64,000 nucleotides of DNA from IMGVR_UViG_3300033145_003233:434001-498000; one strand, 5' to 3'. Numbered from the stretch's first letter, positions 8,265-40,494 are shown. Notes: generated by a model from the sequence alone, not told the origin. A program made the numbers and translations.

Positions 8265-11200
8265 TTATATATCAAATATAATATCTACAGTACTTTCCTC
8301 CCTAGCCGTAGTATATCCTCCCACCAAATAAATATAAGGAGTTCCTGTTACTCCAGAATAAACAGCACTAGCACCATGCTTTGCTTTCAATAAAGAAGCC
8401 ATGGCTAACGATGGATTATCATCGTAACTGCTTAGATAAGAAACAGTAGAACCTTGAATAGATATTTTTTCTAATATATCAAGACTTGAATCATCATCAT
8501 TAGCTCCTCCCATTATATAATAATCAGAAGTATCATATGTAGACGGATCAAGATCATATCTAACCATTGCTGATTGGAATTTAGGAATAGGAAAATCTCC
8601 GAGCAAACCACTTCCAAAATTAATCCATTCTCCTGAGGAAGGGACAGTAAAAGATTGTGCTATATTAATATAAAAATCTTCTATTGGATAAATAAACTGA
8701 TCATCAGATTCTATGGCCCCATTAAACACTATAATTTTATTATCATAAATTAAAGTTAAAGGGAATATTCTCTGATAAGTGTTTAATTCATTAGTTCTTA
8801 AAGCACCAGAATATTCCCAGCTATCATCACCTATAGAATATCTTAAAATTCTTTTATTATAATTACGTATGCTAAAATTACTTGAACTTATTACAGCATC
8901 CTGTATTCCACCTATAATATATATATAATTATTAGAGAGCACATCACAATATTGAGCAGCACCTAAAGCCACTCCTGTTTTTTCTTCCCATGCTCCTCCA
9001 TCACCAATAGATGGCATATCAGATAGCTGCTCCCAGGCCCCTGTATCAGTATGATAAACTTCAACCAGAGAGCTTACAGATATTTGACCACCCGAAGTAG
9101 AATCTGCACCTATCCCCCCTATTAAATATATATCATTATTTACAACAACAGACATACCTCCAAATCTATGAGATAACATAGGAGGACCAGTAGTCCATGT
9201 TTCTGTTAAAATATCATATATTTCATTCTTGTTAGACACATCTAAACTATTATTTTTCAACCCTCCCATAACATAAATCTTATTCCCTACCACACCAATA
9301 AATGAATCTCCTCTATTTTCCGACATACCAGGAACATGAACCCATTCATTATCAGAAATATTATATCTTGCCATAGTTGATGAAAATGGAGTTTCTTCTA
9401 TTATCTCAGCATCTTCATCAAGAACACTAGGTTCATCTACTAAATTAGGAAGAGTTACAATCTCATCTTTATAATCCAACGTAAGATTAAAAATAGCCCC
9501 GACATGCCTATCTGTTTTTTCATTTTCATCGTAAACAGAATATATTTCTAGATTCTCAGTTATACTATCTTCCTCTGGTATTTTTGTAGCGGCAACAGTC
9601 ACATCCACATAACTATATCCCTCATCTCCATCAGTTTGAGTATAATAAATACTACTGCCAGCTAAAAAGAAATTATTGCTAGAATTATTTCCCATAGCAG
9701 TATAAACAGGAGTGCCATCTGGAACAGGCTCTCCTTTCCATGATACTTGGACTCTAATATCTATATCAGAATTATGAAGCAACAAGGTATCATTATCTTC
9801 ATCTCGAAAACTATTATTACCTACCTCAGTCACAACTCCAACTAAATAATCATCATCTGGATCTCCATCAGATTCACTATAAAAATAATTAGTTACTCTT
9901 CTCCACCTCGCACTTATAGATAATGGTTCTGCCAAACAAATTGGACAAGGTGGGACTCCATTATAAAAAGTTCCTCCTCCAGATAGTACCAGCGGCTGAT
10001 CATTAACAAACAGAGTTGTTGTACCAGAAATATAAATAACCGGATTCCATTCAGGCAAATCGCAGTTCGTCAACATTCCACTATTTCGACCAAGACATAG
10101 ACAATCATTTATTTCCTTATCTCTATCACATTCCCCCTCTGGCACATATATTCTACCAGCACCAGGTACAAATTTATTAACCCTTATATAGATATAAGTG
10201 ATATCTGATTCTTCAGCATCATTTAATTCTATAAATGCGCTACCATTATCTATAAAACCATCATCGCCCACTGTCAAATAACGACTTCCTGTATATGAAT
10301 CTATTTCTTCATAAATCTCTCCATGCAATATCTCTACTTCATTGCCCCCTCCATTTATCTGCACAACCTGTCCAGAATTAAGCATTAATTCCTGCAAGTC
10401 ATCCTGAGTAGCACAGCTTCTAAAACAAGTAGCAGATGCAAAATCAGAAGAAAGAGCCACAGCTGGATTTCTACTAATTTTAATACGCTTATAATGAGAA
10501 CCATCTGCCCATAAAGGATTTTGATCGGCTATCATCCATCCACCACCACCCCATGTCTGAGTAAGCCCTGTTCCTCTCCACCCTCCATCTATCTCCATTA
10601 AAAACCTAGCTTTAAATTTATCATACTCAAGAGGATTATATCTTAATGACACAAGCTGTTTTGCACTAGCTGTCAATCCTTCATAAACTACAGTTACACT
10701 TATTTCATGAGTCTCATCCATCTCACTGTCACTTTTCGGAATAGGCCCTAGAAATACATTCCTAGCTACTCCGCTTCTGGTATAAGAATATACACCATTA
10801 GTAAGAGGGACATTATCAATAGAATAAATAGTTCTAACCTCTTGCCCTTGCAACTGAGAGATACCCCATTGAACAATAGTTTGATCAGAAGGATAAATAA
10901 TCAAAGAACGATCATAATCATTAGTCTCATAATTAGGGTAATCAGGATTAACAATAAATACTGTAGATCGTTGCTCAGACACATCTCTACCATCAACTTT
11001 AGGAACAGAAGCCTGAATATCCATTTTAAGAACACTTTGGAATAATATATATATATCTTTTATAGACGAATAACCTGCTTGAGATGCCTTTACAAACAAC
11101 CTAACTGCCTGAGGCATATCTGGAGCATACAAAGGGATATCAACATATGAAATAGGAGTTTGAACTATTGCCCCGCCATGCCCCACTTGCTCTTCAATTC

Positions 11201-14200
11201 CTTGTAAAATAGACATAACGTTGTCAGGAGGCGATACTGTTTGACTCACTTGTAACTTGTCCCCTTCAAGAGGAGAATTATTATCAGACCCTGCATTTCC
11301 ACACAAATTATCTGAAGCCGCATCCCAAACAGCTATCTGGACAGAACCAGACTCAATAGGCTCTCCTTTATATTTAACCTTCACCCTAGAAACAAAAGGA
11401 GCAGATGCTTTCATGTATATGCCATTAAAGCATTCATAATCAACACGTAACGTTTTCTCCTGTGTTACTTCATCAGTTGAATAATAATAGCATCTTTCGC
11501 ACACTGACTTATTATCTCTGTTCTCTAATTCTATTTCCCAAGGATTAGTAAAGCTTACTGTAATAGGTTTAGAATAATATTCAAATATATTGGAGCTACT
11601 AACCTCCTCAGTTTCTACCCCATCTATTTCATCTATGAGACCTTCAATAATACTAGCATATTCCTCTAATGCATTTGTTGGAGCGGCATCTGTATTAGGA
11701 GGAGTATATCCGTCCTTAGGAATAACCGCTTTCAACTGGATAGTAAAACTAGCACTTTGAATTTGAGAAATTATCCTATTATCAGAACTCATCTTCAAAG
11801 TAGCCTTCATAAAACCTTCATCTGTTCTAGTTACAAAGAAATCATAAGCATCTATATCATTAAAAGATATCAAGTTTCCTGAACCAAAAACATCATCAGC
11901 TTGAGATTCCCTAGTAATAGAAGCATTTATATACATTTTAATTAAGGTATCTTCTGATACAGGAGATCCAAATTCATCTGTAATGGAAGCATACAATAAT
12001 ATTGTTTGATCAAAATAAGCATCTATATCTTCTGGACTTTTAACAGGAGTTTTCCATCCTATGCTTATAGTGTTCTCATCAACTAACTCATAATTTAAAT
12101 TTTCAACTTCTACTAAGGGAATTGTTCCACCATTAGCCGAAGAGCTGGGAATACTAGCTGCATGTAAGAATTCCTCTACCTGCGTGCCCACAGAATTATA
12201 ATTAGAAGGTCGTCCATATTTGTCTATATTAACAATAGTATAATAAGCAGTTACATCATTAGTTAAATTTCTATGAACAAATTTTGTATCCGTAACAATC
12301 CCAGTAAAAACAAGTTGATTATCATTCCCTCCGTCCTTATCAACCACCGGATAATTAGAAGAAGAATAATAAATTTTAACCCTAGATATTCTAGAGTCTA
12401 CAGGAGAAGATTGAGACCATCTTAAATATATTTTTTTATTTCCTGGAGTTATTAATTGACCTACAGATGGCTCTTGTGGAGAAGGCAATGATGATGACAA
12501 CTCTACAAAATAATCTTCTATAATCGAAGGCGGAATTATTATTTCCAAAGACGGAGAATCAGATAGAAAACTCACATTACCTCTAGAGTTCTTAGAAAAT
12601 ATCCTATAATAATATTTTTCCCCAATTACGAAATCATCAGAATCTGAGACATAATGTTTCCCTAACAATACATTTTCTTGATATATGACCGTCCCATCTT
12701 CTTCCCAAGAAGGAACATGATTCTCATTTTTTAAAATTATAATTTCGCCATCTACATCATAATCCTGAGGCACTTCATATTCAAAAACTACTAATCTATC
12801 TCCATTATCTTCCTTAATCCCTATATCTTCAATATCTACTTCTACTCCATCATCATCAAAGATCGGATTAGAAAGAATCTGAGTTGAGATATATGTTGCG
12901 CCCCTAACAACATTATGAATACTAAGCTCTGTTATTTTTCCACGAAAATAATTATTTATACCAGATGTTAACCTATGAGCACCAATAGTAAAATAATAAT
13001 TGCCATCAGTCGCCAATGTACCTGTATCTGTCGAAGTACTTACTTGTTCTACTGCATCGATATAAAAAGTAGCAGCATTACTAAGCCCTGCCGCCTGATT
13101 CATAGCAACACAAACATGCTGCCATTTATAAAGCTCAACATTCCCAGTTGTCGTCCAATATCTCCCCTGTTGAGTCGGAGAAAAATTTCTATCTGCATAT
13201 AAGTTATTGCCTTCTACCCAAAAAGAAAAATTTTCTCTCTCTCCATTTGAAGAACTAACAATCACCATCTCATCAGTTGAATAAGGATAAATCCAAGCCA
13301 TTATGGTAAGAGTAGGTTGATCTCCATCAAAATCTCTATAGAGATTAGTTTCCCCATTAATAAAAGCATAATCATTCTCTCCATCAAAAAATAAACCAGA
13401 AGTTCCTGACGGAACGAATTGAGAAGAATACCATGTAGGATCTTCTTTATTAAAAACAGGAGTATTCCCGCCATCACTGAAATCGTATAAGTTTCTCCCC
13501 TCGCCTTCATCCATATGCCACAGAGCTATAATATTTTCATCTCTATTAACTCCGCTTCCAGTAAGAGGAATCCCCTTAGTTAAATCATCAGAATCTACAA
13601 TTGTTCTAAAAACTGATATTCCTCTTGGAACAACCCTTCCCTTAGGAACAACCTTTATTCTCACCCCTTCACTGAATCGCAAATCCTTATCATAAGTATA
13701 AACAGTATAATAATATGTTTGACCTTCTGTTAGATTCTCATCAAGAACCTTACTAATAAAACTATCTTGCACTAATTCTCCATCAACCACGGATGTTGGA
13801 TAACGACTGTTATTTCTGATAACTCTGATACCATCATAATTAGCATTATCATCCGCAAAGAACATGGCACTTAATGTATCAATATCATAAGGATTAATGC
13901 CCTCTTCTTCTATAATTCCAAAAAATAAAACATTAACAAAATTAGCCCCATATTCTACTAAATTATATGTTATATCCCCAGGATAGTTTATATCTATCTT
14001 CCTAATTAGATCTTTAGCTATTGTGTGTCTAAAACCATTACTATCATTCCATGTCATACTTCCGCTTTGATCTATAACAATTGTTACTATTCTATCTTCT
14101 AGCTCTAACTCTATACGTTCTGTCCCGTCATCTTCAGAAATAATTCTTGTATTATTTATCTTCTGATTTTCCTTATCGGAAAAAACATTAATAATCTCAG

Positions 14201-14372
14201 TTTCTGCATTTGAAGGAGGAAGGACCATCTTATTAGTATATTCATCAAAAGCATCAAAATCACTAGAGACACTAAAAGCGTGTCTTTTATCATAATTCAT
14301 ATGCCAGACATTTCTCTGTAAGGATGATTCCCCATTTAATATCTTATAATATTCTAATAAATTTAATGGCAT
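8265..14372 (-). CDS. Giant adhesin-like tail protein: N-terminal half of vWA, FN3-like domains, LamG/ConA, Ig-like domains, C-terminal Kelch propeller
   Basis: IVTIVIDQSGSM (MIDAS DxSxS); YYYTVYTYD and YYYRIFSKN FN3-type strands; ALWHMDEGEG...FDGENDY...IMAWIYP...WQHV...FRGKITEL (LamG); KIYVMGG, DIYLIGG, YIYIIGG and YIYLVGG Kelch blades at about 8290-9380. Confidence 0.75.
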   Translation of the reverse strand: MPLNLLEYYKILNGESSLQRNVWHMNYDKRHAFSVSSDFDAFDEYTNKMVLPPSNAETEIINVFSDKENQKINNTRIISEDDGTERIELELEDRIVTIVIDQSGSMTWNDSNGFRHTIAKDLIRKIDINYPGDITYNLVEYGANFVNVLFFGIIEEEGINPYDIDTLSAMFFADDNANYDGIRVIRNNSRYPTSVVDGELVQDSFISKVLDENLTEGQTYYYTVYTYDKDLRFSEGVRIKVVPKGRVVPRGISVFRTIVDSDDLTKGIPLTGSGVNRDENIIALWHMDEGEGRNLYDFSDGGNTPVFNKEDPTWYSSQFVPSGTSGLFFDGENDYAFINGETNLYRDFDGDQPTLTIMAWIYPYSTDEMVIVSSSNGERENFSFWVEGNNLYADRNFSPTQQGRYWTTTGNVELYKWQHVCVAMNQAAGLSNAATFYIDAVEQVSTSTDTGTLATDGNYYFTIGAHRLTSGINNYFRGKITELSIHNVVRGATYISTQILSNPIFDDDGVEVDIEDIGIKEDNGDRLVVFEYEVPQDYDVDGEIIILKNENHVPSWEEDGTVIYQENVLLGKHYVSDSDDFVIGEKYYYRIFSKNSRGNVSFLSDSPSLEIIIPPSIIEDYFVELSSSLPSPQEPSVGQLITPGNKKIYLRWSQSSPVDSRISRVKIYYSSSNYPVVDKDGGNDNQLVFTGIVTDTKFVHRNLTNDVTAYYTIVNIDKYGRPSNYNSVGTQVEEFLHAASIPSSSANGGTIPLVEVENLNYELVDENTISIGWKTPVKSPEDIDAYFDQTILLYASITDEFGSPVSEDTLIKMYINASITRESQADDVFGSGNLISFNDIDAYDFFVTRTDEGFMKATLKMSSDNRIISQIQSASFTIQLKAVIPKDGYTPPNTDAAPTNALEEYASIIEGLIDEIDGVETEEVSSSNIFEYYSKPITVSFTNPWEIELENRDNKSVCERCYYYSTDEVTQEKTLRVDYECFNGIYMKASAPFVSRVKVKYKGEPIESGSVQIAVWDAASDNLCGNAGSDNNSPLEGDKLQVSQTVSPPDNVMSILQGIEEQVGHGGAIVQTPISYVDIPLYAPDMPQAVRLFVKASQAGYSSIKDIYILFQSVLKMDIQASVPKVDGRDVSEQRSTVFIVNPDYPNYETNDYDRSLIIYPSDQTIVQWGISQLQGQEVRTIYSIDNVPLTNGVYSYTRSGVARNVFLGPIPKSDSEMDETHEISVTVVYEGLTASAKQLVSLRYNPLEYDKFKARFLMEIDGGWRGTGLTQTWGGGGWMIADQNPLWADGSHYKRIKISRNPAVALSSDFASATCFRSCATQDDLQELMLNSGQVVQINGGGNEVEILHGEIYEEIDSYTGSRYLTVGDDGFIDNGSAFIELNDAEESDITYIYIRVNKFVPGAGRIYVPEGECDRDKEINDCLCLGRNSGMLTNCDLPEWNPVIYISGTTTLFVNDQPLVLSGGGTFYNGVPPCPICLAEPLSISARWRRVTNYFYSESDGDPDDDYLVGVVTEVGNNSFRDEDNDTLLLHNSDIDIRVQVSWKGEPVPDGTPVYTAMGNNSSNNFFLAGSSIYYTQTDGDEGYSYVDVTVAATKIPEEDSITENLEIYSVYDENEKTDRHVGAIFNLTLDYKDEIVTLPNLVDEPSVLDEDAEIIEETPFSSTMARYNISDNEWVHVPGMSENRGDSFIGVVGNKIYVMGGLKNNSLDVSNKNEIYDILTETWTTGPPMLSHRFGGMSVVVNNDIYLIGGIGADSTSGGQISVSSLVEVYHTDTGAWEQLSDMPSIGDGGAWEEKTGVALGAAQYCDVLSNNYIYIIGGIQDAVISSSNFSIRNYNKRILRYSIGDDSWEYSGALRTNELNTYQRIFPLTLIYDNKIIVFNGAIESDDQFIYPIEDFYINIAQSFTVPSSGEWINFGSGLLGDFPIPKFQSAMVRYDLDPSTYDTSDYYIMGGANDDDSSLDILEKISIQGSTVSYLSSYDDNPSLAMASLLKAKHGASAVYSGVTGTPYIYLVGGYTTAREESTVDIIFDI

Positions 14373-22209: not shown

Positions 22210-25200
22210 TTAAATATTTAAAGTTACAAATTCGTTATTATCTAATTCTACCATAATGCCAAAATTATTTACGATAGGAACATCCTCATAACCACCGCAA
22301 GACTCCGTACTCTGAATATCTCTTACCTGGAAAGTATATGAATTAGAAGCAAAGACATAATCCCCTCCATCATGAGCTTCTATAGTAAGATAATATATTG
22401 TCCCCACAGTGAAATCTGTAGGAGTAGGCCTATATACTACATTTACTGATTCTCCAGCAGAAACCGAAGAACCATCTTCTGGAATCTGGACATCCTCCAC
22501 AAACCAGCCACTTCTATCGTTACCACTGAAAACAGTCAAATATTCGCTAGTTCTCTCCAAATCTTGATAAAACTTTATTCTAAAATGATAATAATTAGAT
22601 GTACCTTCATTATTGGTAAAATTAAAATCTACAGTATCAATAAATGAAGCAGTGCAACTAGCAATGAATGAATCATCATTAGAAAGAACTACAAATTCTG
22701 AATCATAAATATACTCTATTTTCACAAAATAATATGTATTACAAACTATGTTAGCAAATCCAGGCACAGCAAATAACATATCCTCTGCTGCCCCATGCCC
22801 TATCACAACTCCCTCCTCAGGTATAGCAATACTATTTACGCTAAAACCTTCTGAACTATCAAGAGAATATGCAGAAAATACCGGATTCAATAAGGCAGCA
22901 TCCTCATAAAGAGTAATCCTAAAATGATAACTATTAGTAGTACCAGTATTATTCTCAAGAGAAAAATCAATAGTATTAACAAATAAATTAGAATTATATG
23001 GCCCATATTCATCAAATTCTACTGGCTCAATTAATGAGCGATTTGGACTAATTAATTTAATACCTACCCTTAAATTAGTTCCCGTTTGAGTTACATTGAA
23101 TATTCTATTCTCGTCCACTGGCTGATATTCTGTCCAATCAATGGAATTAGTAGTATTTATCCCAAAAACGATATCAGCAGAAACGGGGATTACCTTACGA
23201 CTGGTAATAATTCCCCTTTCAATTCTGCTAGGCATTGTAAAATTAGTAGTAAAGAAATGAATGGATTCACTAGTTATAGCTCTAATACTTGCCCTATGGA
23301 AAGAAGGAGTTATTCCCTTTTCTGTACTAATTAAAACAACTTTAAATTGGATAAATTGTCCAACCAAATGACTTATATCTACCCCTGATGATTGATAGTT
23401 ATAAAATGGCCCAACCCAATCCGCTATTAAAATATCATTTTGAGAAGTGGAGCTTCTAATATATACTATCGCCTGAGTATTAAATAATTCCGTTGCCTGC
23501 CATGAAATAGTTTCCCATTTAACCAAATCATTTGTTCCATCAAAAATTTCACTAAGATATTCTCCTCTTTCCTCATCAATTTTATCCGCAGAATAAAATT
23601 TATTATCACCAGTTAAAGTATAAGACGTATTGCCAAGTTCATCTAACTCTAATATTTTATTTTCATTCACGAAATCAACAAGGTCCGAGATAGATATACT
23701 ATCTATAAACTTGTTAGTTACAGTTAAATCAGAACCTAGAATAGTCTCATTTCCTGCCCTATCTATAAGCTTTAAATAAATAGTTTTATTCTGTAACAAG
23801 GGATCAAGCTTAGTGATTCCAGTATCAGAGATAACATATAACGTATTTTTATTTTGAGAATCATTAAAAGCTATATCAATTATATCTTCATTATGAGTAT
23901 ATTTCCAAGTCCAAGAACCAGCTTCTGACAAATAATAAAGAGTATTACCAACCGCCGCATACACTGATGAGTAACTAGAAATAGTTGTTCCAGAAACAAC
24001 CACTGGGAATACTTTAATAGAATTTATACTTGCCGGTGCGGTTCTAAAAGATATATCATAAGTATTATTCCCAGCTACTGACCTACGAACCGTGCCATTT
24101 ATCAACCCACCTACAAAAACGTTACCTTCTCTATCAAGATAAGAAATAGATGTCAATGATTCAGTAGAATTATACACTATAAAAGCGGCTTCATTCTCAA
24201 TATCAATTTCATATATATATCCTTCTGGCCCAGTTGCCGCCAATAAATTAGAGCTACCAGCAACACTAGTTAAAGAATAAACATTCTCATCTATCTCTTC
24301 AACTACTTTACTTAAACTAGGATCAATATTTTGAGCCGTCCCATCATTAAATAAATAAACTGCCCCTGTCTGACCTGCCCCTTCTGCATATTCATTGCCA
24401 CTTCCTATTCCTGAACCGATATAAAACTTACCATCTAATTCATGAAAACAATATGCTCTTGATTCAAAAACAGTTAGCATATCAAATTCAACCAACTCTG
24501 TTCCTAAATAATTATAGATATAAATTTTAGCTGGTTCTATATCGTGACCAATACTTACAAGTAACTTATCATTGTATTTAGCTATAAAATCAACAAGCCC
24601 ATCATCATCATAAGTGAAGAGACTTTCCCATGCTTCCGTAACCCAGTTATATTTATATACTATTGCCGGATTAGAAGTAGCTCCATATAATTCATTCTCA
24701 GGAGAAATATAAGTAACTACAGTCCCCATGCCTCGAGGAAAAGTAATTTCTTTAGTAATGGATTCTAAAGAAATACCCAGATCATGATTAAGAGAAGTCG
24801 AAAATGGAACTGACGATTGAGAAGTGACCCCATCAGTTGTAAAATTATCATAATTCGAAACAATCATTCTATCTATGCCAGAACCTTCAACTAAAATATC
24901 ACCAGTAGAAACATCCCCATCTAGGACATTATCAGTAGCACCATTAATAAGAACCTTTACAATACTTCTATCAACTTGCCTATCTATTGTTATACCATCA
25001 ACATCAGTTGGAAAGGAAGGAGGAAGAGTATCTAGATGAATTTTATCAAATGGCAATACACTAGAGCTATCATTAACCTTAACTTCATTATCATTTCCTG
25101 TTGTGGCGACATAGATATCCGAACCATCAAATTCTATATCTGTTATTCTTATTAAATTACCGCCCATATTCTCTTTCTCTATTTGAGTTTGAGCGAAACT

Positions 25201-28125
25201 TGCTATTTCTTCCAAATCTGATCTAACGACAGCTTCTACTACATCATCATTGTTAAGAGGCATTCTAAATTTAATTAATTTAGCTACATCATCATTATAA
25301 CTAAGATTATAACCATAATTAATTCTATTCCCATTAATATAAACTTCAACGATAGAGTCATTAGAAATAGATACCCCTTCGTCCAGAACATAGTAAACAC
25401 TAAAGTCATCACCATCAGCAGTTATAGAAGAAGGCCTATAAAAAAGAGTTGAATAAGTATCTTCATCATCATTAACAATTATCTGATTTATAGCGGACAT
25501 ACTACCAGCAAAAAGAATATTAGGGTCCTTCCATACTATACTTTTTACATTGTTATTCCAGATAGTATCATCTTTAGAAGAAATAGTATTATCAAAATTA
25601 AACCCAACCATTTTATTAATCCCGCTAGAAGTAGCTATATATCTAATTGCCGTATTCCTAATAGCTATATCATTTATTATATTAGAAGATAAACCATTTG
25701 TAGTAGTAACCTGTATAAAGTTATCTTTATAAAATCTATATAAGCCATTCTCTTTTGTTCCAATCCATACACAATTATTCTCATCTACTCTTAAACATGT
25801 AATATATTCCCCATTACAAGCAGGATTAGTATATGTAGTAGAAATAGCAATAATCCCTAATGCAGGTGGGATAGTTCCAACAACATCCTCTACCACAACA
25901 TTATCATAAATATACAACCCAGAATCAGTACCAACAAACATTTTATTATCTTTATCAAAGACAATAGAAGTAACAACTTCTGATGATATTCCTGGCAAAA
26001 CTAAACTTTTAAAACCATTAATATGGTCGGTGCCATATCTTACAACGCCCTCTCTCCCACCTATATACATATTATTATTCTTATCAAAAGCTATAGCTCT
26101 TAATTTTTGCAACCCTTCCTCATCATCAGCTTGTTGATCTCCGCTCGCATTTACAAAACCAGGTAAATCATGACCCTCTCCAACAGAAACAAGTCTATTT
26201 TGCCTATTGATATAATAAAACATCCCGCAAGGACCGAGCAACCATACATCTCCATAATTATTAACTATAGCATCATGAGCAGATAAGGAATTAACATCAA
26301 GGGTATTAACTCCCAATTCTTTAATGGCATAAGGCTCTACAGCATCATTCAAATAATATTTTATTTCTTTAAAAACATAATGAGCATTTAACACATCAGA
26401 AAAATCGCCAAATCTTATCTCTTTTGTAAAAATACTTTTATTTAATGTATAATCGCGATCCCTATTTCCGAAAGAAGGAGAATTAGGATCTACACCTATA
26501 TCTACACCATAATTGATAGATATAGTAGAACTATCTCGAGATAAATTATAAAAAGCACACTTAGCTTTTAAGAGTCTATCCTGAGAAAATACAAACTTAT
26601 TTTCGCTCGTCAAATAAGATTCGTACACGATAGGTAATTCCCCATTAAAAAATGTCGGAATCCCAGGAGAATATGCATTTCTATCATCATTAAAAACCAA
26701 CATAACACTAGAATTAAAAGAATCATTCTCATAAACAGCCACAAAAAGAGCAGAACTAGATGGCCTATTTTCTTGAAGAGTTGTATCAAAATAGGGATCT
26801 GATGGATTAGTAACTAAATTGAACTCCCGGTAATCCCCAGTCTTAAAATCTTGCCAAACTATATATATATTTCCAGTTGAAAGTTGTTCAGAAAGGACAG
26901 GGTACATAGCCCCTCCACGACCATCAATGGTAGTAGAACCACCTGAAATCATATCTAGAGAAGGAGTCAAGATAGCAGTAAAAATTTGATATTCCCCATA
27001 AGCATTATCATGCCACACTACAAAAATCTTACCCTCCACGTTAGCCAATATACTAGAATGATCTGCTTTCCCTAATATATTCTCTTGATTATACGAATCT
27101 GATACGATAACTGGAGAAACTTTAACTGCGCTAATAGCATTATATTTAATTACTTCTATATATGAACTATTATTTTGCTTTTTAGCAGTCCATGATATAA
27201 ATAAATCGTCCATATAAGAAGCTATAGAAGGACGAAAAGAACCATATGTATTTGTAGATATCTCTTCTTCTCCTCTCCATTTATTTTCATTGATTATAAA
27301 AATATCTATATATGTTTCCGGATGAGTTTGTCTGCTATCTTCCCAAACAACACAAATATTAGATTGACTATCAAAAATAGGTTTAGGATACTTGCAATAT
27401 CCTATATCTTGACCAGTATAATAAGGATCACTCCATCCTATATCATTTTTATATACTATCCCTATTACGCTACCTTCTGTTTGTTTTGACTCAAAAACTA
27501 CATATATATTCTCATTACTGTCCGCCATAATAGAAGGAAACTGAATACCATTATCTGACACAACAATTACTTCTGGTTCAGACCATACTGTTCCGTTAAA
27601 TTTAGAATAGAATAAAGAACCAACATTATTACCATCATCCCACCATGAAGCATGTAAATTACCACTAACGTCTTCAAAAATAACTGGATTCAGAGCATTG
27701 CCACTTACCGTTGCCTTTTCAGAAAAATTAGCATTAAGCAACTCTGAATAAGATGAAGAATCAGACGATTTAGCATATAATTTTAAATTATCTCCTTTGC
27801 CAATAATGCGATAATCATTTTCAGCAGTAGCATCATAAATAACTGACTGATTAGCATTGGATAAAATTATTTCTTGAGTTAAAAAGTTAATTGTTTCTTG
27901 TCGAGTTCCATCATTAACATATAATCCTATTCCATTCCCCTTCTTATTTTCATCAGCAAACCATTCACTATTCTGCACATCAGACACCCTTAAATTAAGA
28001 TCAATAGTCCACCCTTTTTTATTATCCGCATTATTGAACCACTCTGTCCCAAATCTATTTTGAGTATAATAGCACACCCCTCCTTTTTGTGCCCCATATT
28101 CGTCTATTATACTTGGATTAGCCAT
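22210..28125 (-). CDS. Large multi-propeller tail/adhesion protein with interrupted ConA-like and Ig-like domains and two C-terminal HFRxxFYxD domains
   Basis: LHASWWD, IYVVFE, ICVVWED and IYIVWQD blades; Reg_prop-like CVWIGTKENGLYRF...GLSSNIINDI; DTLPP...KTIYLKLIDRAGN; GEYLSEIFD...FIQFKVVL...TPSF; two YHFRI domains. Confidence 0.68.
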   Translation of the reverse strand: MANPSIIDEYGAQKGGVCYYTQNRFGTEWFNNADNKKGWTIDLNLRVSDVQNSEWFADENKKGNGIGLYVNDGTRQETINFLTQEIILSNANQSVIYDATAENDYRIIGKGDNLKLYAKSSDSSSYSELLNANFSEKATVSGNALNPVIFEDVSGNLHASWWDDGNNVGSLFYSKFNGTVWSEPEVIVVSDNGIQFPSIMADSNENIYVVFESKQTEGSVIGIVYKNDIGWSDPYYTGQDIGYCKYPKPIFDSQSNICVVWEDSRQTHPETYIDIFIINENKWRGEEEISTNTYGSFRPSIASYMDDLFISWTAKKQNNSSYIEVIKYNAISAVKVSPVIVSDSYNQENILGKADHSSILANVEGKIFVVWHDNAYGEYQIFTAILTPSLDMISGGSTTIDGRGGAMYPVLSEQLSTGNIYIVWQDFKTGDYREFNLVTNPSDPYFDTTLQENRPSSSALFVAVYENDSFNSSVMLVFNDDRNAYSPGIPTFFNGELPIVYESYLTSENKFVFSQDRLLKAKCAFYNLSRDSSTISINYGVDIGVDPNSPSFGNRDRDYTLNKSIFTKEIRFGDFSDVLNAHYVFKEIKYYLNDAVEPYAIKELGVNTLDVNSLSAHDAIVNNYGDVWLLGPCGMFYYINRQNRLVSVGEGHDLPGFVNASGDQQADDEEGLQKLRAIAFDKNNNMYIGGREGVVRYGTDHINGFKSLVLPGISSEVVTSIVFDKDNKMFVGTDSGLYIYDNVVVEDVVGTIPPALGIIAISTTYTNPACNGEYITCLRVDENNCVWIGTKENGLYRFYKDNFIQVTTTNGLSSNIINDIAIRNTAIRYIATSSGINKMVGFNFDNTISSKDDTIWNNNVKSIVWKDPNILFAGSMSAINQIIVNDDEDTYSTLFYRPSSITADGDDFSVYYVLDEGVSISNDSIVEVYINGNRINYGYNLSYNDDVAKLIKFRMPLNNDDVVEAVVRSDLEEIASFAQTQIEKENMGGNLIRITDIEFDGSDIYVATTGNDNEVKVNDSSSVLPFDKIHLDTLPPSFPTDVDGITIDRQVDRSIVKVLINGATDNVLDGDVSTGDILVEGSGIDRMIVSNYDNFTTDGVTSQSSVPFSTSLNHDLGISLESITKEITFPRGMGTVVTYISPENELYGATSNPAIVYKYNWVTEAWESLFTYDDDGLVDFIAKYNDKLLVSIGHDIEPAKIYIYNYLGTELVEFDMLTVFESRAYCFHELDGKFYIGSGIGSGNEYAEGAGQTGAVYLFNDGTAQNIDPSLSKVVEEIDENVYSLTSVAGSSNLLAATGPEGYIYEIDIENEAAFIVYNSTESLTSISYLDREGNVFVGGLINGTVRRSVAGNNTYDISFRTAPASINSIKVFPVVVSGTTISSYSSVYAAVGNTLYYLSEAGSWTWKYTHNEDIIDIAFNDSQNKNTLYVISDTGITKLDPLLQNKTIYLKLIDRAGNETILGSDLTVTNKFIDSISISDLVDFVNENKILELDELGNTSYTLTGDNKFYSADKIDEERGEYLSEIFDGTNDLVKWETISWQATELFNTQAIVYIRSSTSQNDILIADWVGPFYNYQSSGVDISHLVGQFIQFKVVLISTEKGITPSFHRASIRAITSESIHFFTTNFTMPSRIERGIITSRKVIPVSADIVFGINTTNSIDWTEYQPVDENRIFNVTQTGTNLRVGIKLISPNRSLIEPVEFDEYGPYNSNLFVNTIDFSLENNTGTTNSYHFRITLYEDAALLNPVFSAYSLDSSEGFSVNSIAIPEEGVVIGHGAAEDMLFAVPGFANIVCNTYYFVKIEYIYDSEFVVLSNDDSFIASCTASFIDTVDFNFTNNEGTSNYYHFRIKFYQDLERTSEYLTVFSGNDRSGWFVEDVQIPEDGSSVSAGESVNVVYRPTPTDFTVGTIYYLTIEAHDGGDYVFASNSYTFQVRDIQSTESCGGYEDVPIVNNFGIMVELDNNEFVTLNI

Positions 28126-28141
28126 ATTTCCCCTGCCTTAT

Positions 28142-30247
28142 TTAACTTAAAGTATTTATATTAAAACCATCATCATCAAAATAAATTGGATCAAAATCAA
28201 CATTCTTAACTATCTCCCAATTCTGACTAGTTGGGAGAGTGGAGTCACGATCTCCATTTTCATCTATAAAAATTAACTCATGATTAAATTGATTTATCAA
28301 ATAACCAGTTATAATAGTTACCCCCTTAGCATGAGCACAAACAACCATCTTTTCATCAGGAGATTTATTAATTTTATTGATCGGGAAAAAAGTTCTTGGA
28401 ACAGTACTTCTCATTGCTGGATTTCCAGATCCTATAGCTAGAATAGTGCTACTTTCATTCGTATTATCCGGATTTAACCCGAACATATATTTACCGTTAA
28501 CATATCCCCTTAATGATACAATTTCATTGTCCCCAAATTCCATAAAATCATGAAATTGCATATTAGCATATTCGCTAGAAACCCCCGGCAAGAAATAACC
28601 AGAAACAGTATAAGATAAATATTTGTAATGAATAGCAAAAGCATTAGCAGCATATGATGCCATTTCTAACTTCTTTATACTAGATTCTTGTGTAAAGATT
28701 CCTGCTCCGTCAATCACTAACTCTCTATTTAAATATATCTTTATATCATTATTCTTGCCAGCTGCTGTTAATACGCTAGCAACTGTAGTAGTAACTTCAT
28801 AATCTATCTGAGAACCAGAAATTAATCTTATCTTGCCATTATATAATCTTATCTCCGCAAATCTATCTCCATCATTAATCCTAATAACATGATAATCAGT
28901 TACATTCCCACTTTGATCATCGTTATTGCTATTAGTAGATGGAACTAGAAACAATGTCTCTAATGTCCACCCAGTAGAGTTAGAAACCCCTTCCTCCCAT
29001 CTACTTCCAGTAGTTCTAAAATGTATAGATGAATATTTATCAAAAGACTGGATATCGCTTACAGCAACAGATATATAATAATCCCTTCCTCTTTGCAACA
29101 AATTAGGAGGTATTGTAAATGAGTCCCTATTATAATTAATAACAGTAGAATAGACATTATCTGATTCATAAAATGTGCCTATCTTTATAGATACATAATT
29201 AATCTCTTTGCCATCAGGAACGTATGACTTCCATTTAACTAGTGGAGTAATAGACGATATTTTTAATGGATTTTGACCCCCATCTACAACCATATTAAAA
29301 ACAATAAAATCGCTAGCTACTATAGTTTCTATTTCTGAAGAGGTATAAGAACCACCATCTTCATGTTTTACTTCAAATCTAATTGTGTCTCCCACAATTA
29401 TATCTGGTCTAATATATTGTTGATTATTTAAACTTACAATAAGCAAATCATTAATATACCAACGTATTAAAACATTTTCTTGTTCTATTTCATTACTAGC
29501 AAGATAATCGGCCTTTAAAAAATCATTAGGATTAGGATTCTTTGGTAAAATTTTAAGATTAGAAACAGTAACAGCAGTTTTGCTAACTTTAACATGTGGA
29601 GAAGTAACTCTAGAACCGCATTCATAACCATCTGAAGGATAAATATCTACATTCCATAAATCTCCATTCTGTAAAAAATATGACTGAATAGCAACGGCAT
29701 TGTCAAATTGCCTTTGATATACACCATTTTTAAACCATCTTATTATAGTTCCGCTTTCGATATCCCCATCATCATCATTAAATACATAATTTAACTCTAA
29801 ATCATCTGTAGCAGAAGGAGTTGAAGGAACAATACTAGCATTCGTAACATATGGTAATGAATTATATACAAAAGAGAACGTTACCCATCCACTAGTTTTA
29901 TTAGTTTCATCAGTTACTTGAATTTGACCATAATAAGCTTCTCCTCTTTCTATCGGAACCCCAGAATACTCCCAGAAATGCTCTTGGCTAGTCACCTCTC
30001 CAGTTTGAACTCTATTCCCGACAAAAGAATCTCTTCCTATATTGATACTAGATGCCGATATCCTAATCTCATAAGTTTCTTGAGGATATTCCCCGATAGT
30101 AGTGATAATACCATCATCATCAACTAAAACCTTGTCCACTAACTCAAAGTCCCAACTTAAAGTTGGATATTCCTCCGCAATCTTAACAGGTGTTTCATAA
30201 CTAGTAATAGATTGATTACTTACTTTTAATGATAAATCTATAGCCAT
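28142..30247 (-). CDS. Virion structural protein: FN3-like, two IRWxxNG Ig-like domains, ConA-like domain
   Basis: NSLPYVTNASIVP...DDDGDIESGTIIRWFKNG...GDLWNVDIYPSDG; GWTLE...INDGDR ConA-like block shared with 22210..28125. Confidence 0.62.
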   Translation of the reverse strand: MAIDLSLKVSNQSITSYETPVKIAEEYPTLSWDFELVDKVLVDDDGIITTIGEYPQETYEIRISASSINIGRDSFVGNRVQTGEVTSQEHFWEYSGVPIERGEAYYGQIQVTDETNKTSGWVTFSFVYNSLPYVTNASIVPSTPSATDDLELNYVFNDDDGDIESGTIIRWFKNGVYQRQFDNAVAIQSYFLQNGDLWNVDIYPSDGYECGSRVTSPHVKVSKTAVTVSNLKILPKNPNPNDFLKADYLASNEIEQENVLIRWYINDLLIVSLNNQQYIRPDIIVGDTIRFEVKHEDGGSYTSSEIETIVASDFIVFNMVVDGGQNPLKISSITPLVKWKSYVPDGKEINYVSIKIGTFYESDNVYSTVINYNRDSFTIPPNLLQRGRDYYISVAVSDIQSFDKYSSIHFRTTGSRWEEGVSNSTGWTLETLFLVPSTNSNNDDQSGNVTDYHVIRINDGDRFAEIRLYNGKIRLISGSQIDYEVTTTVASVLTAAGKNNDIKIYLNRELVIDGAGIFTQESSIKKLEMASYAANAFAIHYKYLSYTVSGYFLPGVSSEYANMQFHDFMEFGDNEIVSLRGYVNGKYMFGLNPDNTNESSTILAIGSGNPAMRSTVPRTFFPINKINKSPDEKMVVCAHAKGVTIITGYLINQFNHELIFIDENGDRDSTLPTSQNWEIVKNVDFDPIYFDDDGFNINTLS

Positions 30248-32233: not shown

Positions 32234-33778
32234 TTAATTTCCCGTATCTATCATAGTAAAAGTATAATTGCTACTAGCATCTTTGTCCATAACCATAATT
32301 TCAGATGAATTACTAAAGAATATATATAGAACATTTCCATCAGTTTTTATCTTATAAATATTTCTAGCATTCAAATATGAGCTATGTTCTGTAGAAATAG
32401 TAGATCCACCAAAGCTCAATAATATACCATTTTCTAAACCTAGAAATAACTTATTATCAAATACTTCCATAGAGTTAATAACAGAATCCGAAAAATATAA
32501 TGAATTTAAAGTAGCATTATCGGCATCTAAATATTGACTATCATTATCCGCTACCGATTCTACTTCCGAGACATTAAATCTCTGCAAGATACCTTTATTA
32601 TCACTATCTTTTATCGCTATATATAACATACTATTATAAAATTTTAATGAAGTAGCATCTCCATCTAAAGTAGATAATAATGTTAAATTTTTATACAATT
32701 GAGCATTAGCAGTAGAACTCAAAGCAAACGCCATATATAAATCACCATCAATATTATCATACAACAAAGATGTTACTTCTCTATCTCCTAAATTTTTATA
32801 AGTTCTAAAATAATTAGCATTAGGATCATTATAAATCATATTCCCGGCATAATCTTTAAATCTTACTTTAATCAATTTAACTCCATCATCTCCAGAGACA
32901 TCCCATGTAGACCACGAAGTTACATCCGCAAAGTCACCAGACTCTGGCTGCTCCTCTACCCCTACATCTTCTTGTTCAATTCTAAATTCCTTAACCGCGC
33001 TTGTTTTATCATAAAAATTCAAATTAACGATAAGATTTCTTTCCTTAATATATTCAGTATTGTCTGATATTTTAATAGTTCCTTTAGGTGGGGTAGTATC
33101 AATAAGAAAATAATTTATATTATTAATAATCAAATCACTTATAAAAACAGGAGATGACACATTTATATCATCTACCAACTCTATCTTTAGAGAATAGTCA
33201 GAAGCCGTAGAAAAACCGCTAACATCTAAATCAAATGGATCTGAACCAACCATAATATTGCTACGAAGCAAGGTCCAGTCTATGCCTAGACTTTCTGAAC
33301 TATAGTAAATTTGATAAAAAGATCTCTGAGAACATCTGCCCAGAATAGAACTATGATCAAATACAATAGGGATATACGAATAATAAGTAGCTCTCTGTTG
33401 AGGCTCAACCATAGATGGAGATGGCAATTCTTTATTAATAATGGCAAAATCAGCAGCAGAAAAAGATACTTTACTCCTCAATCCCTCATGATTAACCGCC
33501 CTGATACCAACTCGACACTGATTACCCTTAAGATTTTTATGTATGTTATAGGAATAAGAGGAATTTCCATATGGAATAGTAGCTATATGTAATAACTCCG
33601 GTTTTTTGTCGGCATCGTAAAAATCTGTAATAAATATTTCGTACCATAACATTTCCGAAGAAGGGACATTAGACGGTTCTATCCATTGAATACTTGCAAC
33701 TCCATCTGCCAATATCTCTCCACCATTAGGATATATAATCGTAGGAGCATCAGTTAATATGTTAAAAAGAACAGCCAT
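32234..33778 (-). CDS. Ig-like domain structural protein with C-terminal propeller blades
   Basis: PTIIYPNGGE...IQW; DTTPPKGTIKI...GDDGVKLIKVRFKDYAGN. AAGGTGA SD. Confidence 0.6.
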   Translation of the reverse strand: MAVLFNILTDAPTIIYPNGGEILADGVASIQWIEPSNVPSSEMLWYEIFITDFYDADKKPELLHIATIPYGNSSYSYNIHKNLKGNQCRVGIRAVNHEGLRSKVSFSAADFAIINKELPSPSMVEPQQRATYYSYIPIVFDHSSILGRCSQRSFYQIYYSSESLGIDWTLLRSNIMVGSDPFDLDVSGFSTASDYSLKIELVDDINVSSPVFISDLIINNINYFLIDTTPPKGTIKISDNTEYIKERNLIVNLNFYDKTSAVKEFRIEQEDVGVEEQPESGDFADVTSWSTWDVSGDDGVKLIKVRFKDYAGNMIYNDPNANYFRTYKNLGDREVTSLLYDNIDGDLYMAFALSSTANAQLYKNLTLLSTLDGDATSLKFYNSMLYIAIKDSDNKGILQRFNVSEVESVADNDSQYLDADNATLNSLYFSDSVINSMEVFDNKLFLGLENGILLSFGGSTISTEHSSYLNARNIYKIKTDGNVLYIFFSNSSEIMVMDKDASSNYTFTMIDTGN

Positions 33779-39400: not shown

Positions 39401-40494
39401 GACGGACTATCTATAATTTGTAAAGCATTCCATATATCATCAGACACATGAATTTGAAAATCCTCATATGGCTCTTTGGGAGCTATTACAACATCTTTAT
39501 TAGCTACAATGTAATTATCCAAAACCGTTTTTTGAGTAGCAACAAACACCTTATTTATATTAAACCTAGGATCTCCAGCATCCTCATAATTTTTATCTGG
39601 AGAAGTATAAGCATGTAACGCCATACCATTATTTAATAATGTTACAGAATTATGGAATATTTTACAAATCTTATCTGCATCCCCACCCAAACTAACAGAT
39701 GCTGTACTACCTTCAGCACAACGCATCGGCAAACCAACAGATGGAACCGATATTCCAATATCTATCTCTTCTGGAGCAACTGGGGCCTCAATACAATCCC
39801 CAGGTATACTCCATGCACCAGGGACCACATATGCTGGATCGGCTGGATTACACCTAGGGTCAATCGCCGCATGCATAGCTAGAGTTTGAGGTAAAACATT
39901 AAGATACAAATTAGTAAATTTTTTATTAGTATAATTATCTTCTTCGGAATATAAGTAAACAGGCATTTGCCTTACTGCACTTAGCTCATTACTGCCTACG
40001 ACATCTCTACCTTTAAAATTAATTGACCCTGTACCATTTTTATTAATAATAATTCTAAATAATTTGTCATTTATAGAAATAGTACTCTTACTATTTGGCT
40101 TACCCACGATATGAATAGAACATAATCCATCCATCCCAATAAAAGATGGAGTTATAGAAATTTTCTCACTAAATTCACTCGCCTCATCCTTTATGCTAAA
40201 AATGGAAGGACAAATTTGAGCAGTTTTGTAAGAACCATCTGATTGCTTTTCTTCTATATGGGCAAAAATAGAAATAGCAGCTTGAGACGAATGTTCTGGA
40301 ATATTAAGATTCATTACCCCCATACAGGATTTGTTATCCATACGCTGAAATGATCCAATATCAACCTTAACCCCATGCGTAGCATTTTCCATATTAATGC
40401 GAAATTGTTTTGCCCCAATTTCAGAAATCTCAAATTTCAAAGATTTAGCATCTTCTAATATTCCAGATGGAGGATATAATATAAGATTAGCCAT
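36499..40494 (-). CDS. Large structural protein with dispersed propeller blades and a C-terminal HFR-like domain
   Basis: LHIVWESNRG, LHLSWQSNRD and MITWHDDRDGNYNIY blades; FDAASIADRII...YDTGFIS module; YNFSIEFYHD. The start overlaps the glycosyltransferase stop by 8 nt. Confidence 0.55.
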   Translation of the reverse strand: MANLILYPPSGILEDAKSLKFEISEIGAKQFRINMENATHGVKVDIGSFQRMDNKSCMGVMNLNIPEHSSQAAISIFAHIEEKQSDGSYKTAQICPSIFSIKDEASEFSEKISITPSFIGMDGLCSIHIVGKPNSKSTISINDKLFRIIINKNGTGSINFKGRDVVGSNELSAVRQMPVYLYSEEDNYTNKKFTNLYLNVLPQTLAMHAAIDPRCNPADPAYVVPGAWSIPGDCIEAPVAPEEIDIGISVPSVGLPMRCAEGSTASVSLGGDADKICKIFHNSVTLLNNGMALHAYTSPDKNYEDAGDPRFNINKVFVATQKTVLDNYIVANKDVVIAPKEPYEDFQIHVSDDIWNALQIIDSPSVSDIYVVLFNAMIGFQRIKIVERTTDEYTGVRTLTGEVGNTNVKISNWLFCVNAVFYRSSIYPSLYLDGITIPYIRDGSGNYLQTINISVASNSKYVGLEEETYVYLIAEAVAETKSQLFFYSFSAGRTSLFDSENYGWEQLTDTGNNKNPRAYTDSINNLHIVWESNRGDICQIYYGVIGPSSPSLVSSSVSSYVDKYAEFSSTDTKSFSSIDIPSMERVVGSGSNPIPEYETSDLVPVAWAIEEDTIGSVTERSSSGDLNDLLITVNPVDEEAMAFLPLEIVTSVDNPSVLGVFPYSQFNYQMSFKLAATVNQSNSIVSDDDYNGIIIEEKEIDKLFDSWKDGFTVSIDENVDNQPVYVKNNNKFVIGKSDNIFDRIIPIIGSYKDTPDPSTERFRIEILKSDNNLKDFSLGLLFEKSYFRATNIETPSAYYDRGYGDPYTPEETEVIFTGRAKLVVLIKTEDISDERSDYIIVREFPEILEINELSSYTIILNYKSIGSDEVANVLDTYDRTYNNKFIGTITLLIDDAPKFSQSFISTLSDDYNYFDLGFGVPYGGYYVADKMSPSKFGVFENVSMNLEINDVRITSPTFAHNSAIINLPVSVQDSTELRVIDESSINLPDNTTRYNPSNNLLSLNFRAEEDIVSYASSYDLAGNNFYSVYDVEDIDKISVEFDAASIADRIIIAAGSTVLYDTGFISTPVVSQGFNFDVDIISYDIISVTVESGGDDSSWSFIVYFKKIYSNNGFLQVPITIEGINQSVDVSGGTCNDLHLSWQSNRDRYWNIFYTNSVDKLSPFRYDTKITNTESNSLRPSVSVNRNGSRMITWHDDRDGNYNIYAARSLSGYSCDEDKCERKMLDAFKDYIVECLVSFEFEVDLSGAYNFSIEFYHDSSLTNLYKTISIEGAENRWFLNGDSMSLSYDADDNLLGVVLNNGDTVSISYRPHKDDEIFDMVLYAKLLYSVT

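What the first reader, a model, noticed from the sequence alone, without database searches (positions are those of the whole stretch)
22210..28125. Nested domain architecture: domains intact in one gene are interrupted by whole propellers in a paralogue
Seen in the 1971-aa protein. (a) The ConA-like domain W...N..GWT..L.V...NDG.R...GK..LK.Y (27770-28060) is continuous in the 701-aa protein (28590-29010). Here its closing strands (KEIRFGDFS...IKYYLNDAVEP, ~26330-26430) come only after a ~400-aa propeller insert. (b) The Ig-like domain DTTPP...KLIKVRFKDYAGN is intact in the 514-aa protein (32840-33100). Here it is split into DTLPP...SGIDRMIVSN (24780-25035) and KTIYLKLIDRAGN (23741-23787) around a ~330-aa propeller. 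Similar interruptions appear in the 1958-, 1331-, 1078- and 334-aa proteins. Inference: this locus diversifies receptor-binding proteins by inserting modules into loops of scaffold domains rather than by end-to-end shuffling. The split vWA would be the extreme case.
Basis: partly seen in the sequence, partly recalled or inferred. Interest (0 to 1): 0.72.

Follow-up and report, generated by a model that had tools for sequence, protein, structure and literature searches.

The report
Propellers nested inside sandwich domains
A 1971-residue protein in the virion-gene region of a 548-kb phage has two small beta-sandwich domains (one LamG/ConA-like, one Ig-like) that are each interrupted by a complete seven-bladed beta-propeller; this is a clear but old and conserved example of a known design principle, not active shuffling at this locus.

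Summary

Both inserts are present in all 77 orthologues (27-62% identity), and only one has a module-sized internal indel. About 35 differ by N-terminal fusions, including fusion with the 701-aa gene. So close relatives vary end to end. In more distant relatives a second LamG loop carries different modules (vWA, legume lectin). Loop insertion is therefore a recurrent, older route in this family. The claims for the 1958-, 1331-, 1078- and 334-aa proteins were not verified. A receptor-binding role is plausible from context but unproven.

The parts
27721..28074 (-). LamG/ConA-like scaffold, N-terminal piece (aa 18-135; nine predicted strands)
   Evidence: hhalign to the 701-family contiguous domain, E 4.5e-14. 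HMMER E 1e-10. AF2 pLDDT 83-94.
26431..27705 (-). Propeller A, a complete seven-bladed beta-propeller inserted in the LamG domain (aa 141-565)
26326..26430 (-). LamG/ConA-like scaffold, closing piece (aa 566-600; strands 569-574 and 579-591)
   Evidence: hhalign alone E 5.7e-5 at template positions 112-161. Splicing raises the score from 86 to 102. pLDDT 77-89. E569, F572 and G573 are invariant in 78 sequences.
25426..26292 (-). Propeller B (aa about 612-900), Reg_prop-type, not nested in this protein
   Evidence: Pfam Reg_prop 38 bits. Foldseek top matches are BT4663-type sensor propellers. AF2 strands.
25051..25413 (-). Middle beta-rich region (aa about 905-1025), fold not assigned
   Evidence: AF2 secondary structure. 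Conserved as module 'Mid' in relatives.
24769..25044 (-). Ig-like scaffold, N-terminal piece (aa 1028-1119; starts DTLPP)
   Evidence: hhalign to the 514 family, E 6.8e-7 alone. D1032 and P1036 are invariant.
23797..24768 (-). Propeller C, a complete seven-bladed WD40-like propeller inserted in the Ig-like domain (aa 1120-1443)
23686..23796 (-). Ig-like scaffold, closing piece (aa 1444-1480; KTIYLKLIDRAGN plus a last strand)
   Evidence: Spliced hhalign 95.2%, E 2.7e-8. L-D-AGN invariant. Docks on the N piece: ipSAE 0.49 against 0.00 for the best control, 108-119 contacts.
22213..23679 (-). C-terminal beta-rich domains (aa 1483-1971), including two tandem repeats of about 115 aa that are shared with the 899- and 1331-aa proteins
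   Evidence: AF2. BLASTP and HMM hits of p899, p1331 and p1078 to this region.
28523..29029 (-). Contiguous LamG/ConA-like paralogue in the 701-aa protein (aa 407-575)
   Evidence: Atlas structure TM 0.55-0.64 to Laminin_G_3 clusters. Template of the hhalign tests.
32831..33109 (-). Contiguous Ig-like paralogue in the 514-aa protein (aa 224-316; DTTPP...DYAGN)
   Evidence: Atlas structure TM 0.72-0.77 to Big_13/Big_5 clusters. hhalign template.

Best explanation
The 1971-aa gene encodes a giant, all-beta, multi-domain protein in the virion (tail-side) gene block of a 548-kb phage.

Architecture (shown or predicted). The chain runs: LamG-N, [propeller A], LamG-C, propeller B, middle region, Ig-N, [propeller C], Ig-C, C-terminal domains. 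Two small beta-sandwich domains act as scaffolds. Each has a complete seven-bladed propeller spliced into one loop. This is sterically easy because a propeller's two ends lie next to each other (established knowledge of the fold).

Consequence of nesting (inferred). Each propeller is held to the chain at two points. It should therefore project sideways in a fixed orientation, rather than swinging on a single linker.

Origin (inferred from homology). The LamG copy most likely arose by duplication of the LamG domain of the upstream 701-aa gene, followed by insertion of the propeller. The two genes are fused into one in some relatives.

Age (shown by comparison). The nesting is old and fixed in the whole orthologue family. 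Close relatives differ mainly by N-terminal fusions. Over longer times a second LamG loop has accepted other binding modules (vWA, legume lectin).

Function (inferred only). Multivalent adhesion to host surface glycans or proteins, with the lectin-like propellers as binding heads.
For: - The genome is a 547,943-bp IMG/VR virus record with 29 tRNAs and no 16S.
- Upstream of the block of giant genes lie matches to minor tail protein (phrog_290, E 9e-15), tail assembly protein and head-tail adaptor (both weak), virion structural protein and a protease.
- Discontinuous LamG.
- Discontinuous Ig. In one search the score was 0.49 against a best control of 0.00. That mark was reached by 58 of 80 solved complexes and 2 of 110 mismatched pairs. 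At 0.60 or under, it was reached by only 7 of those 80 solved complexes and by both mismatches that passed. The tool rates this 'weak support'.
- The interface includes DTLPPSF, alternate residues of strand B and GSGIDRMIVSNYD on one side, and aa 1447-1463 plus 1472-1477 on the other. This is the pattern of a shared core, not of a surface patch.
- The propellers are complete and exactly fill the gaps.
- AF2 models have mean pLDDT 83.5 and 83.0.
- The architecture is conserved in 77 orthologues and in 43 of 150 distant representatives.
- Alternative inserts sit at LamG loop 1 in distant relatives.
- The 701-aa and 1971-aa proteins are fused in about 15 relatives. Here they are separated by TAA, 16 nt containing a ribosome-binding site, and ATG.
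Against: - I could not read model coordinates, so contact between aa 18-135 and aa 566-600 in 3D is not shown.
- The complex test for the Ig pieces is only 'weak support'.
- The closing pieces are short. The Ig one is not significant on its own.
- No PHROG, Pfam tail-fibre family or known phage protein matches the protein. The virion location and the adhesin role therefore rest on gene context and fold.
- Propeller A is only 9-12% identical to the PLL lectins, so sugar binding is not implied.
Confidence: 0.72

Rival explanations
1. Strong form of the reader's view: insertion of modules into scaffold loops, rather than end-to-end joining, is the main way this locus generates new receptor-binding specificities.
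For: - In distant relatives LamG loop 1 holds nothing, 20-30 aa, a vWA domain, a legume-lectin domain or other segments of about 400 aa.
- P0003 has a lineage-specific 161-aa Cys-rich insert inside propeller B.
- P0232 has 1440 aa between the LamG pieces, against about 430 here.
- P0236 has a Reg_prop-like rather than propeller-C-like insert in the Ig domain.
Against: - Among 77 orthologues only 1 has a module-sized internal indel.
- About 35 have different N-terminal additions, and neighbouring genes are fused or split.
- The propeller inserts have nearly constant size: 388-469 aa and 288-367 aa.
- The same two profiles find no interrupted copies in the other giant proteins of the window.
Confidence: 0.2
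2. No nesting: the flanking segments are separate small elements (linkers or beta-hairpins), and their resemblance to the ends of the intact domains is motif-level or chance.
For: - Pairwise BLASTP is insignificant for (b) and marginal for (a).
- The Ig closing strand alone has E 0.01-0.04, and the HMMER closing piece for LamG is not significant alone.
- 3D contact for (a) was not observed directly.
Against: - Both closing pieces fall at the collinear position of the template and raise the profile score when spliced.
- The closing piece of (a) is independently significant (E 5.7e-5).
- The motifs at both ends are invariant in 75-78 orthologues.
- The intervening segments are complete propellers with nothing left over.
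- The Ig pieces dock specifically, 0.49 against 0.00.
- The closing strands have pLDDT 77-89.
Confidence: 0.06
3. The architecture is as described, but the protein is not a receptor-binding tail protein. It could be a head or tail decoration protein, or a protein with another role such as binding particles or mucus-like polymers.
For: - There is no match to any tail-fibre, tailspike or baseplate family.
- BFVD matches are only low-TM hits to large uncharacterised virion-type proteins.
- Ig-like and lectin-like domains also occur on capsid decoration proteins (general knowledge).
Against: - The gene sits in a co-oriented run of 16 giant genes directly downstream of tail-related genes.
- The domain content (LamG, Ig, lectin-like propellers, FG-GAP, Kelch, vWA in the neighbours) is typical of adhesion proteins.
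Confidence: 0.25

Closest known systems
'Evolved Dit' proteins of siphophages of Gram-positive bacteria (carbohydrate-binding modules inserted in loops of the Dit galectin domain; PMC7291167)
   Same: A phage adhesion-device protein in which a small beta-sandwich scaffold carries whole binding modules spliced into its loops. Presence or absence of the insert varies between related phages.
   Different: - The scaffolds here are LamG-like and Ig-like, not galectin.
- The inserts are 325-425-aa seven-bladed propellers, not CBMs of about 150 aa.
- The host protein is a 1971-aa chain in a huge phage with no detectable Dit homology.
- The inserts are fixed in all close relatives.
Integrin subunits (own knowledge, not tested here): the beta I (vWA-like) domain is inserted in the Ig-like hybrid domain, which is inserted in the PSI domain; the alpha I (vWA) domain is inserted in a seven-bladed FG-GAP propeller
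   Same: Nested insertion involving the same fold classes (vWA, Ig-like sandwich, seven-bladed propeller) in an adhesion protein. Relatives of this protein carry a vWA inside a beta-sandwich loop.
   Different: No sequence relationship was shown. The direction of nesting is reversed for the propeller, which is the guest here and the host in integrin alpha.
Photorhabdus PLL/PHL seven-bladed propeller lectins and the CylK C-terminal propeller (PDB 8q82, 5c9l, 5mxh, 7ron)
   Different: Only 9-12% identity. Those are free-standing or terminal domains. Binding-site residues were not compared.
LamG / ConA-like jelly-roll domains (Pfam Laminin_G_3, clan CL0004)
   Same: Fold of the contiguous 701-aa copy (TM 0.55-0.64). 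The spliced 1971-aa copy is homologous to it.
   Different: The Pfam Laminin_G_3 model does not score either copy. The family found here has 348 members at E<=1e-3 and appears to be a distinct lineage.

Membership tests
Discontinuous (nested) domain architecture | Two sequence pieces flanking the insert align collinearly to one contiguous homologous domain | tested here: met
   LamG: pieces 23-121 and 566-600 against the 701 family, spliced E 6.4e-16. Ig: spliced E 2.7e-8, 95%.
Discontinuous (nested) domain architecture | The intervening segment is a complete autonomous domain | tested here: met
Discontinuous (nested) domain architecture | The flanking pieces form one compact fold in three dimensions | tested here: inconclusive
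   Ig pieces as separate chains: ipSAE 0.49 against 0.00 for the best control, 108-119 contacts, rated 'weak support'. Only pLDDT 77-89 for the closing strands is available.
LamG / ConA-like (Pfam PF13385 Laminin_G_3) | Scores above the Pfam gathering threshold | tested here: not met
   No Laminin_G_3 hit for the 701- or 1971-aa proteins at E<=0.01.
LamG / ConA-like (fold level) | Jelly-roll beta-sandwich superimposable on LamG domains | tested here: met
   701 aa 407-575: TM 0.55-0.64 to several Laminin_G_3 clusters. This was shown for the contiguous copy only.
Bacterial Ig-like domains (Big_13 / Big_5 type) | Ig-like beta-sandwich fold; Pfam model match | tested here: inconclusive
   Fold met for 514 aa 218-330 (TM 0.72-0.77). 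No Pfam Big family scored in the 514- or 1971-aa proteins.
PLL/PHL-type propeller lectins | Seven-bladed propeller fold | tested here: met
PLL/PHL-type propeller lectins | Conserved inter-blade sugar-binding residues and sugar binding | not tested
   Identity is 9-12%. Binding residues were not compared, and binding is not testable with these tools.
Phage tail fibre / receptor-binding protein | Homology to a known tail fibre, tailspike or baseplate family | tested here: not met
   No PHROG hit. No tblastn hit in 50,697 phage records. BFVD matches are low-TM only.
Phage tail fibre / receptor-binding protein | Encoded in the tail or virion module | tested here: met
   Minor tail protein (phrog_290, E 9e-15) and weaker tail assembly and adaptor matches lie just upstream of the co-oriented block. 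Virion structural protein and protease matches lie further upstream.
Phage tail fibre / receptor-binding protein | Present in the virion and binds the host receptor | not testable with these tools
   Uncultured phage; the host is unknown.

The most novel reading that the evidence does not exclude
Huge phages of this clade use a small set of beta-sandwich scaffolds (a distinct LamG-like lineage and an Ig-like domain) as insertion platforms. Defined loops accept interchangeable binding modules: seven-bladed propellers of several types, vWA, legume lectin, Cys-rich modules. The result is rigid, multivalent giant adhesins. This would be a natural 'loop-grafting' system for host-range evolution, distinct from the familiar C-terminal tip swapping of tail fibres.
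Probability: 0.3. Interest if true: 0.65.

Novelty: new variant of a known kind. Interest (0 to 1): 0.45.

Why it matters
Giant proteins of huge phages are almost uncharacterised. The founding survey says only that some proteins of up to 7,694 aa are 'tentatively' structural (PMC7162821).

- A reliable domain map shows that naive beads-on-a-string annotation misreads these proteins. Half-domains that look like orphan segments are the two ends of one scaffold.
- The map points to the propellers as the likely ligand-binding heads to express and test.
- The defined insertion loops (LamG loop 1 and loop 2, Ig E-F loop) tolerate 300-400-aa guests. That could interest protein engineers.

The principle itself, domain insertion including in phage adhesion devices, is already known.

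Tried and rejected
- Pairwise BLASTP of the 1971-aa protein against the 701- and 514-aa proteins was too weak to decide.
- hhalign against the single 514-aa sequence was inconclusive until a 90-sequence family profile was built.
- HMMER with the 514-family Ig model does not find the 1971-aa copy.
- Whole-model Foldseek and VIA-align searches are dominated by propellers. They cannot show the small discontinuous domains. The models' coordinates are not exposed, so I could make no contact map.
- The PDB sequence search with the LamG profile found nothing.
- PHROGs gave nothing for the target or most neighbours. tblastn against phage records gave nothing.
- The LamG and Ig profiles against the other giant proteins of the window (1958, 1331, 1078, 334, 899, 1119, 1320, 2035, 1039, 645, 328 aa) gave no hit at 20% probability or more.
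- BFVD fold search gave only low-TM matches to large uncharacterised virion-type proteins.
- I considered a four-chain complex job to test both split domains at once. I rejected it because the tool's 'longest other chain replaced' control would then not have tested the Ig pair.

Full report
**Setting.** The window is bases 434001-498000 of a single 547,943-bp contig that the collection holds as a virus record. The contig has 33.6% G+C, 29 tRNA genes and no 16S rRNA. From window position 5143 to beyond 63942 the minus strand carries an unbroken run of co-oriented giant genes. Their products are 1039, 2035, 645, 1958, 1971, 701, 328, 334, 514, 899, 1331, 366, 1078, 1119 and 1320 aa, plus a 5139-aa ORF that runs off the window. 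Just upstream in transcription order lie matches to a minor tail protein (phrog_290, E 9e-15), weaker matches to a tail assembly protein and a head-tail adaptor, and further on virion structural proteins and a protease. Downstream the block ends at DUF4379 and DUF4238 genes. The target ORF (22210-28125, minus, 1971 aa) has only a Reg_prop repeat in Pfam. It has nothing in PHROGs and nothing in 50,697 phage records.

These are aa 22-118 and 565-598 for the ConA-like pieces, and aa 1030-1115 and 1446-1461 for the Ig pieces. The 'intact' copies are aa 412-552 of the 701-aa protein and aa 226-313 of the 514-aa protein. Pairwise BLASTP is not convincing: E 0.019 for (a), and nothing for (b). I therefore collected families. 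There are 78 full-length homologues of the 1971-aa protein at 27-62% identity. There are 117 homologues of the 514-aa protein. The 701-aa family was recovered from relatives in which it is fused to the 1971-aa protein.

**Claim (a), profile-profile comparison.**
- aa 23-121 match the first 60% of the contiguous 701-family domain (98.2%, E 4.5e-14).
- The segment around aa 555-600, taken alone, matches the last third of that domain at the collinear position (E 5.7e-5, 66%).
- Splicing the two pieces raises the score from 86 to 102 (E 6.4e-16) and covers template positions 17-161 of 176.
- A plain HMM of the 701-family domain gives the same two collinear pieces in the 1971-aa protein and hits no other ORF of the genome.
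- The contiguous copy has the LamG/ConA-like jelly-roll fold: TM 0.55-0.64 to several Laminin_G_3 clusters. The Pfam Laminin_G_3 model does not score it.

**Claim (b), profile-profile comparison.**
- The spliced profile (aa 1025-1120 plus 1440-1475) matches aa 224-316 of the 514 family at 95.2%, E 2.7e-8. The score is 50.3, against 40.6 for the N piece alone.
- The closing strand alone is too short to be significant (E 0.01-0.04). It aligns precisely to KLIKVRFKDYAGN.
- The end motifs DTLPP and L-DRAGN are invariant in 75 orthologues.
- The 514-aa copy is a contiguous bacterial Ig-like domain: TM 0.72-0.77 to Big_13/Big_5 clusters.

**What lies between the pieces?** I predicted AlphaFold2 models of aa 1-1030 and aa 880-1971 with 78- and 75-row alignments. 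They have mean pLDDT 83.5 and 83.0.
- The propellers thus fill the gaps exactly, with nothing left over.
- The closing strands of (a), aa 569-574 and 579-591, are confidently modelled strands with pLDDT 77-89. They belong to neither neighbouring propeller.

**Do the pieces form one domain in space?** The tools return no coordinates, so I could not compute contacts in the AF2 models. As a substitute I folded the two Ig pieces as separate chains, with their family alignments and with controls.
- The score (ipSAE) was 0.49 at the median of three runs. The best of three controls scored 0.00.
- The tool's mark was reached by 58 of 80 solved complexes and 2 of 110 mismatched pairs. At 0.60 or under it was reached by only 7 of those 80 solved complexes and by both mismatches that passed. 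The tool rates the result 'weak support'.
- There are 108-119 residue contacts.
- The contacting residues on one side are DTLPPSF, alternate residues of strand B and GSGIDRMIVSNYD. On the other side they are aa 1447-1463 and 1472-1477. This is what a shared beta-sandwich core looks like.
- The prior from the profile comparison is already high, so I accept (b) as a split domain.
- For (a) the 3D step was not done, and I say so in the membership table.

**Evolution: close relatives.**
- All 77 orthologues carry both inserts at the same places.
- A scan for indels of 30 aa or more finds one module-sized internal difference. P0003 has 161 extra residues in a loop of propeller B, and they contain DUF7107/EB-like Cys-rich modules.
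- About 35 of 77 have N-terminal extensions of 100-1100 aa. These are Metallophos, Laminin_G_3, FG-GAP plus Big_2 (like the window's 645-aa protein), or the whole 701-aa protein.
- In the window the 701- and 1971-aa genes are truly separate: TAA, then 16 nt containing AGGCAGGGGA, then ATG.
- At this range, then, variation is end to end.

**Evolution: distant relatives.** An exhaustive profile search with the contiguous LamG domain found 348 proteins at E<=1e-3. I mapped module HMMs on the best 150.
- There are 170 contiguous LamG copies in 133 proteins.
- 43 proteins have an interrupted copy followed by propeller A.
- The distance from the LamG-N piece to the LamG-C piece is 388-469 aa in 26 proteins and 1440 aa in one (P0232).
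- The Ig split is 288-367 aa wherever it could be measured.
- A second site, LamG loop 1 (HMM positions about 45-50, aa about 47-65 here, a low-confidence loop in the model), is empty in 31 proteins.
- In 3-4 proteins that site holds 20-30 aa. In about nine it holds 233-405 aa.
- These larger inserts include a vWA domain. P0273 scores VWA_3 at 40 bits, above the cut-off. Homologous inserts occur in P0269, P0276, P0280, P0285 and P0289.
- They also include a legume-lectin domain in P0247 (Lectin_legB 39.7 bits, above the cut-off) and a weak DUF6923-like segment in P0218.
- P0236 has a Reg_prop-like rather than propeller-C-like insert in its Ig domain.
- Some proteins (P0274, P0295, P0331) share the C-terminal modules but have a contiguous LamG.

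Loop insertion is therefore a recurrent route in the wider family, at particular loops, over long times.

**Claims not verified.** The LamG and Ig profiles hit none of the other giant proteins of the window. Module HMMs give only fragmentary, ambiguous hits there. The statement about the 1958-, 1331-, 1078- and 334-aa proteins, and the 'split vWA' (partial VWA_2 hits in the 2035- and 1039-aa proteins), therefore remain open.

**Mechanism.**
- Shown or predicted: the domain order, the completeness of the inserts, and their conservation.
- Inferred: the sandwiches serve as scaffolds. Because a propeller's ends are adjacent, it can be spliced into a loop and is then held at two points, which should fix its orientation. 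The lectin-like and WD40-like propellers are the probable ligand-binding heads of a multivalent virion adhesin.
- The receptor-binding role rests only on gene context and fold classes.

**Comparison with what is known.**
- Domain insertion is a well-known architecture.
- The closest phage precedent is the 'evolved Dit', where carbohydrate-binding modules sit in loops of the galectin domain (PMC7291167).
- Integrins offer a classical nested example with the same fold classes (my own knowledge, not tested here).
- New here are the scaffolds (a distinct LamG-like lineage and an Ig-like domain) and the size and kind of the guests (whole seven-bladed propellers).
- Also new are the setting (giant proteins of huge phages, so far only 'tentatively structural', PMC7162821) and the evidence for a second, variable insertion loop.
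- I rate it a new variant of a known kind, of moderate interest.

Noticed in passing
window 28125-28144 (junction of the 701-aa and 1971-aa genes): The two adjacent genes are separate here (TAA, then 16 nt containing AGGCAGGGGA, then ATG). In about 15 relatives they are one fused ORF (for example P0025, 2656 aa, 53% identical over the whole 701-aa part). Both carry a copy of the same LamG-like domain, which suggests an old tandem duplication.
   Followed up: partly
window 5143-14372 (1039-aa and 2035-aa proteins): There are partial VWA_2 hits: profile positions 2-50 at aa 97-146 of the 2035-aa protein, and positions 52-106 at aa 212-269 of the 1039-aa protein. In distant relatives of the target a vWA is nested inside a LamG loop, and the 2035-aa protein has a Laminin_G_3 at aa 352-495, so nesting is worth testing here too.
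   Followed up: no
window 22213-22900 (aa about 1740-1971 of the target); also 899-aa protein aa 274-354 and 1331-aa protein aa 1237-1323: Two tandem repeats of about 115 aa (IDFSLENNTG...YHFRITLYED and VDFNFTNNEG...YHFRIKFYQD) form the C-terminus. Homologous copies occur in other giant proteins of the block. This is a shared module of unknown fold.
   Followed up: partly
window 40487-41587: A GT4-family glycosyltransferase (Glyco_trans_1_4, E 1e-15) is embedded among the giant structural-type genes.
   Followed up: no
window 52793-52960 (C-terminus of the 5139-aa ORF, which extends beyond the window): A 36-bp tandem repeat, 4.7 copies at 97% identity, encodes GREAPQEVKVAV repeats inside an Arg/Glu-rich low-complexity tail. 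It coincides with the only G+C peak of the window (0.405 at 52-54 kb).
   Followed up: partly
P0003 aa about 700-865 (orthologue, not in the window): The only module-sized internal indel among 77 orthologues is a 161-aa insert with two DUF7107/EB-like Cys-rich modules in a loop of propeller B.
   Followed up: yes
window 2344-4710: A DUF4238 protein and a protein with four DUF4379 treble-clef zinc-finger repeats lie immediately downstream of the giant-gene block. Their function is unknown.
   Followed up: no
genome G000:C1:171686-183550 (outside the window): 27 of the 29 tRNA genes are clustered in 12 kb on one strand.
   Followed up: no
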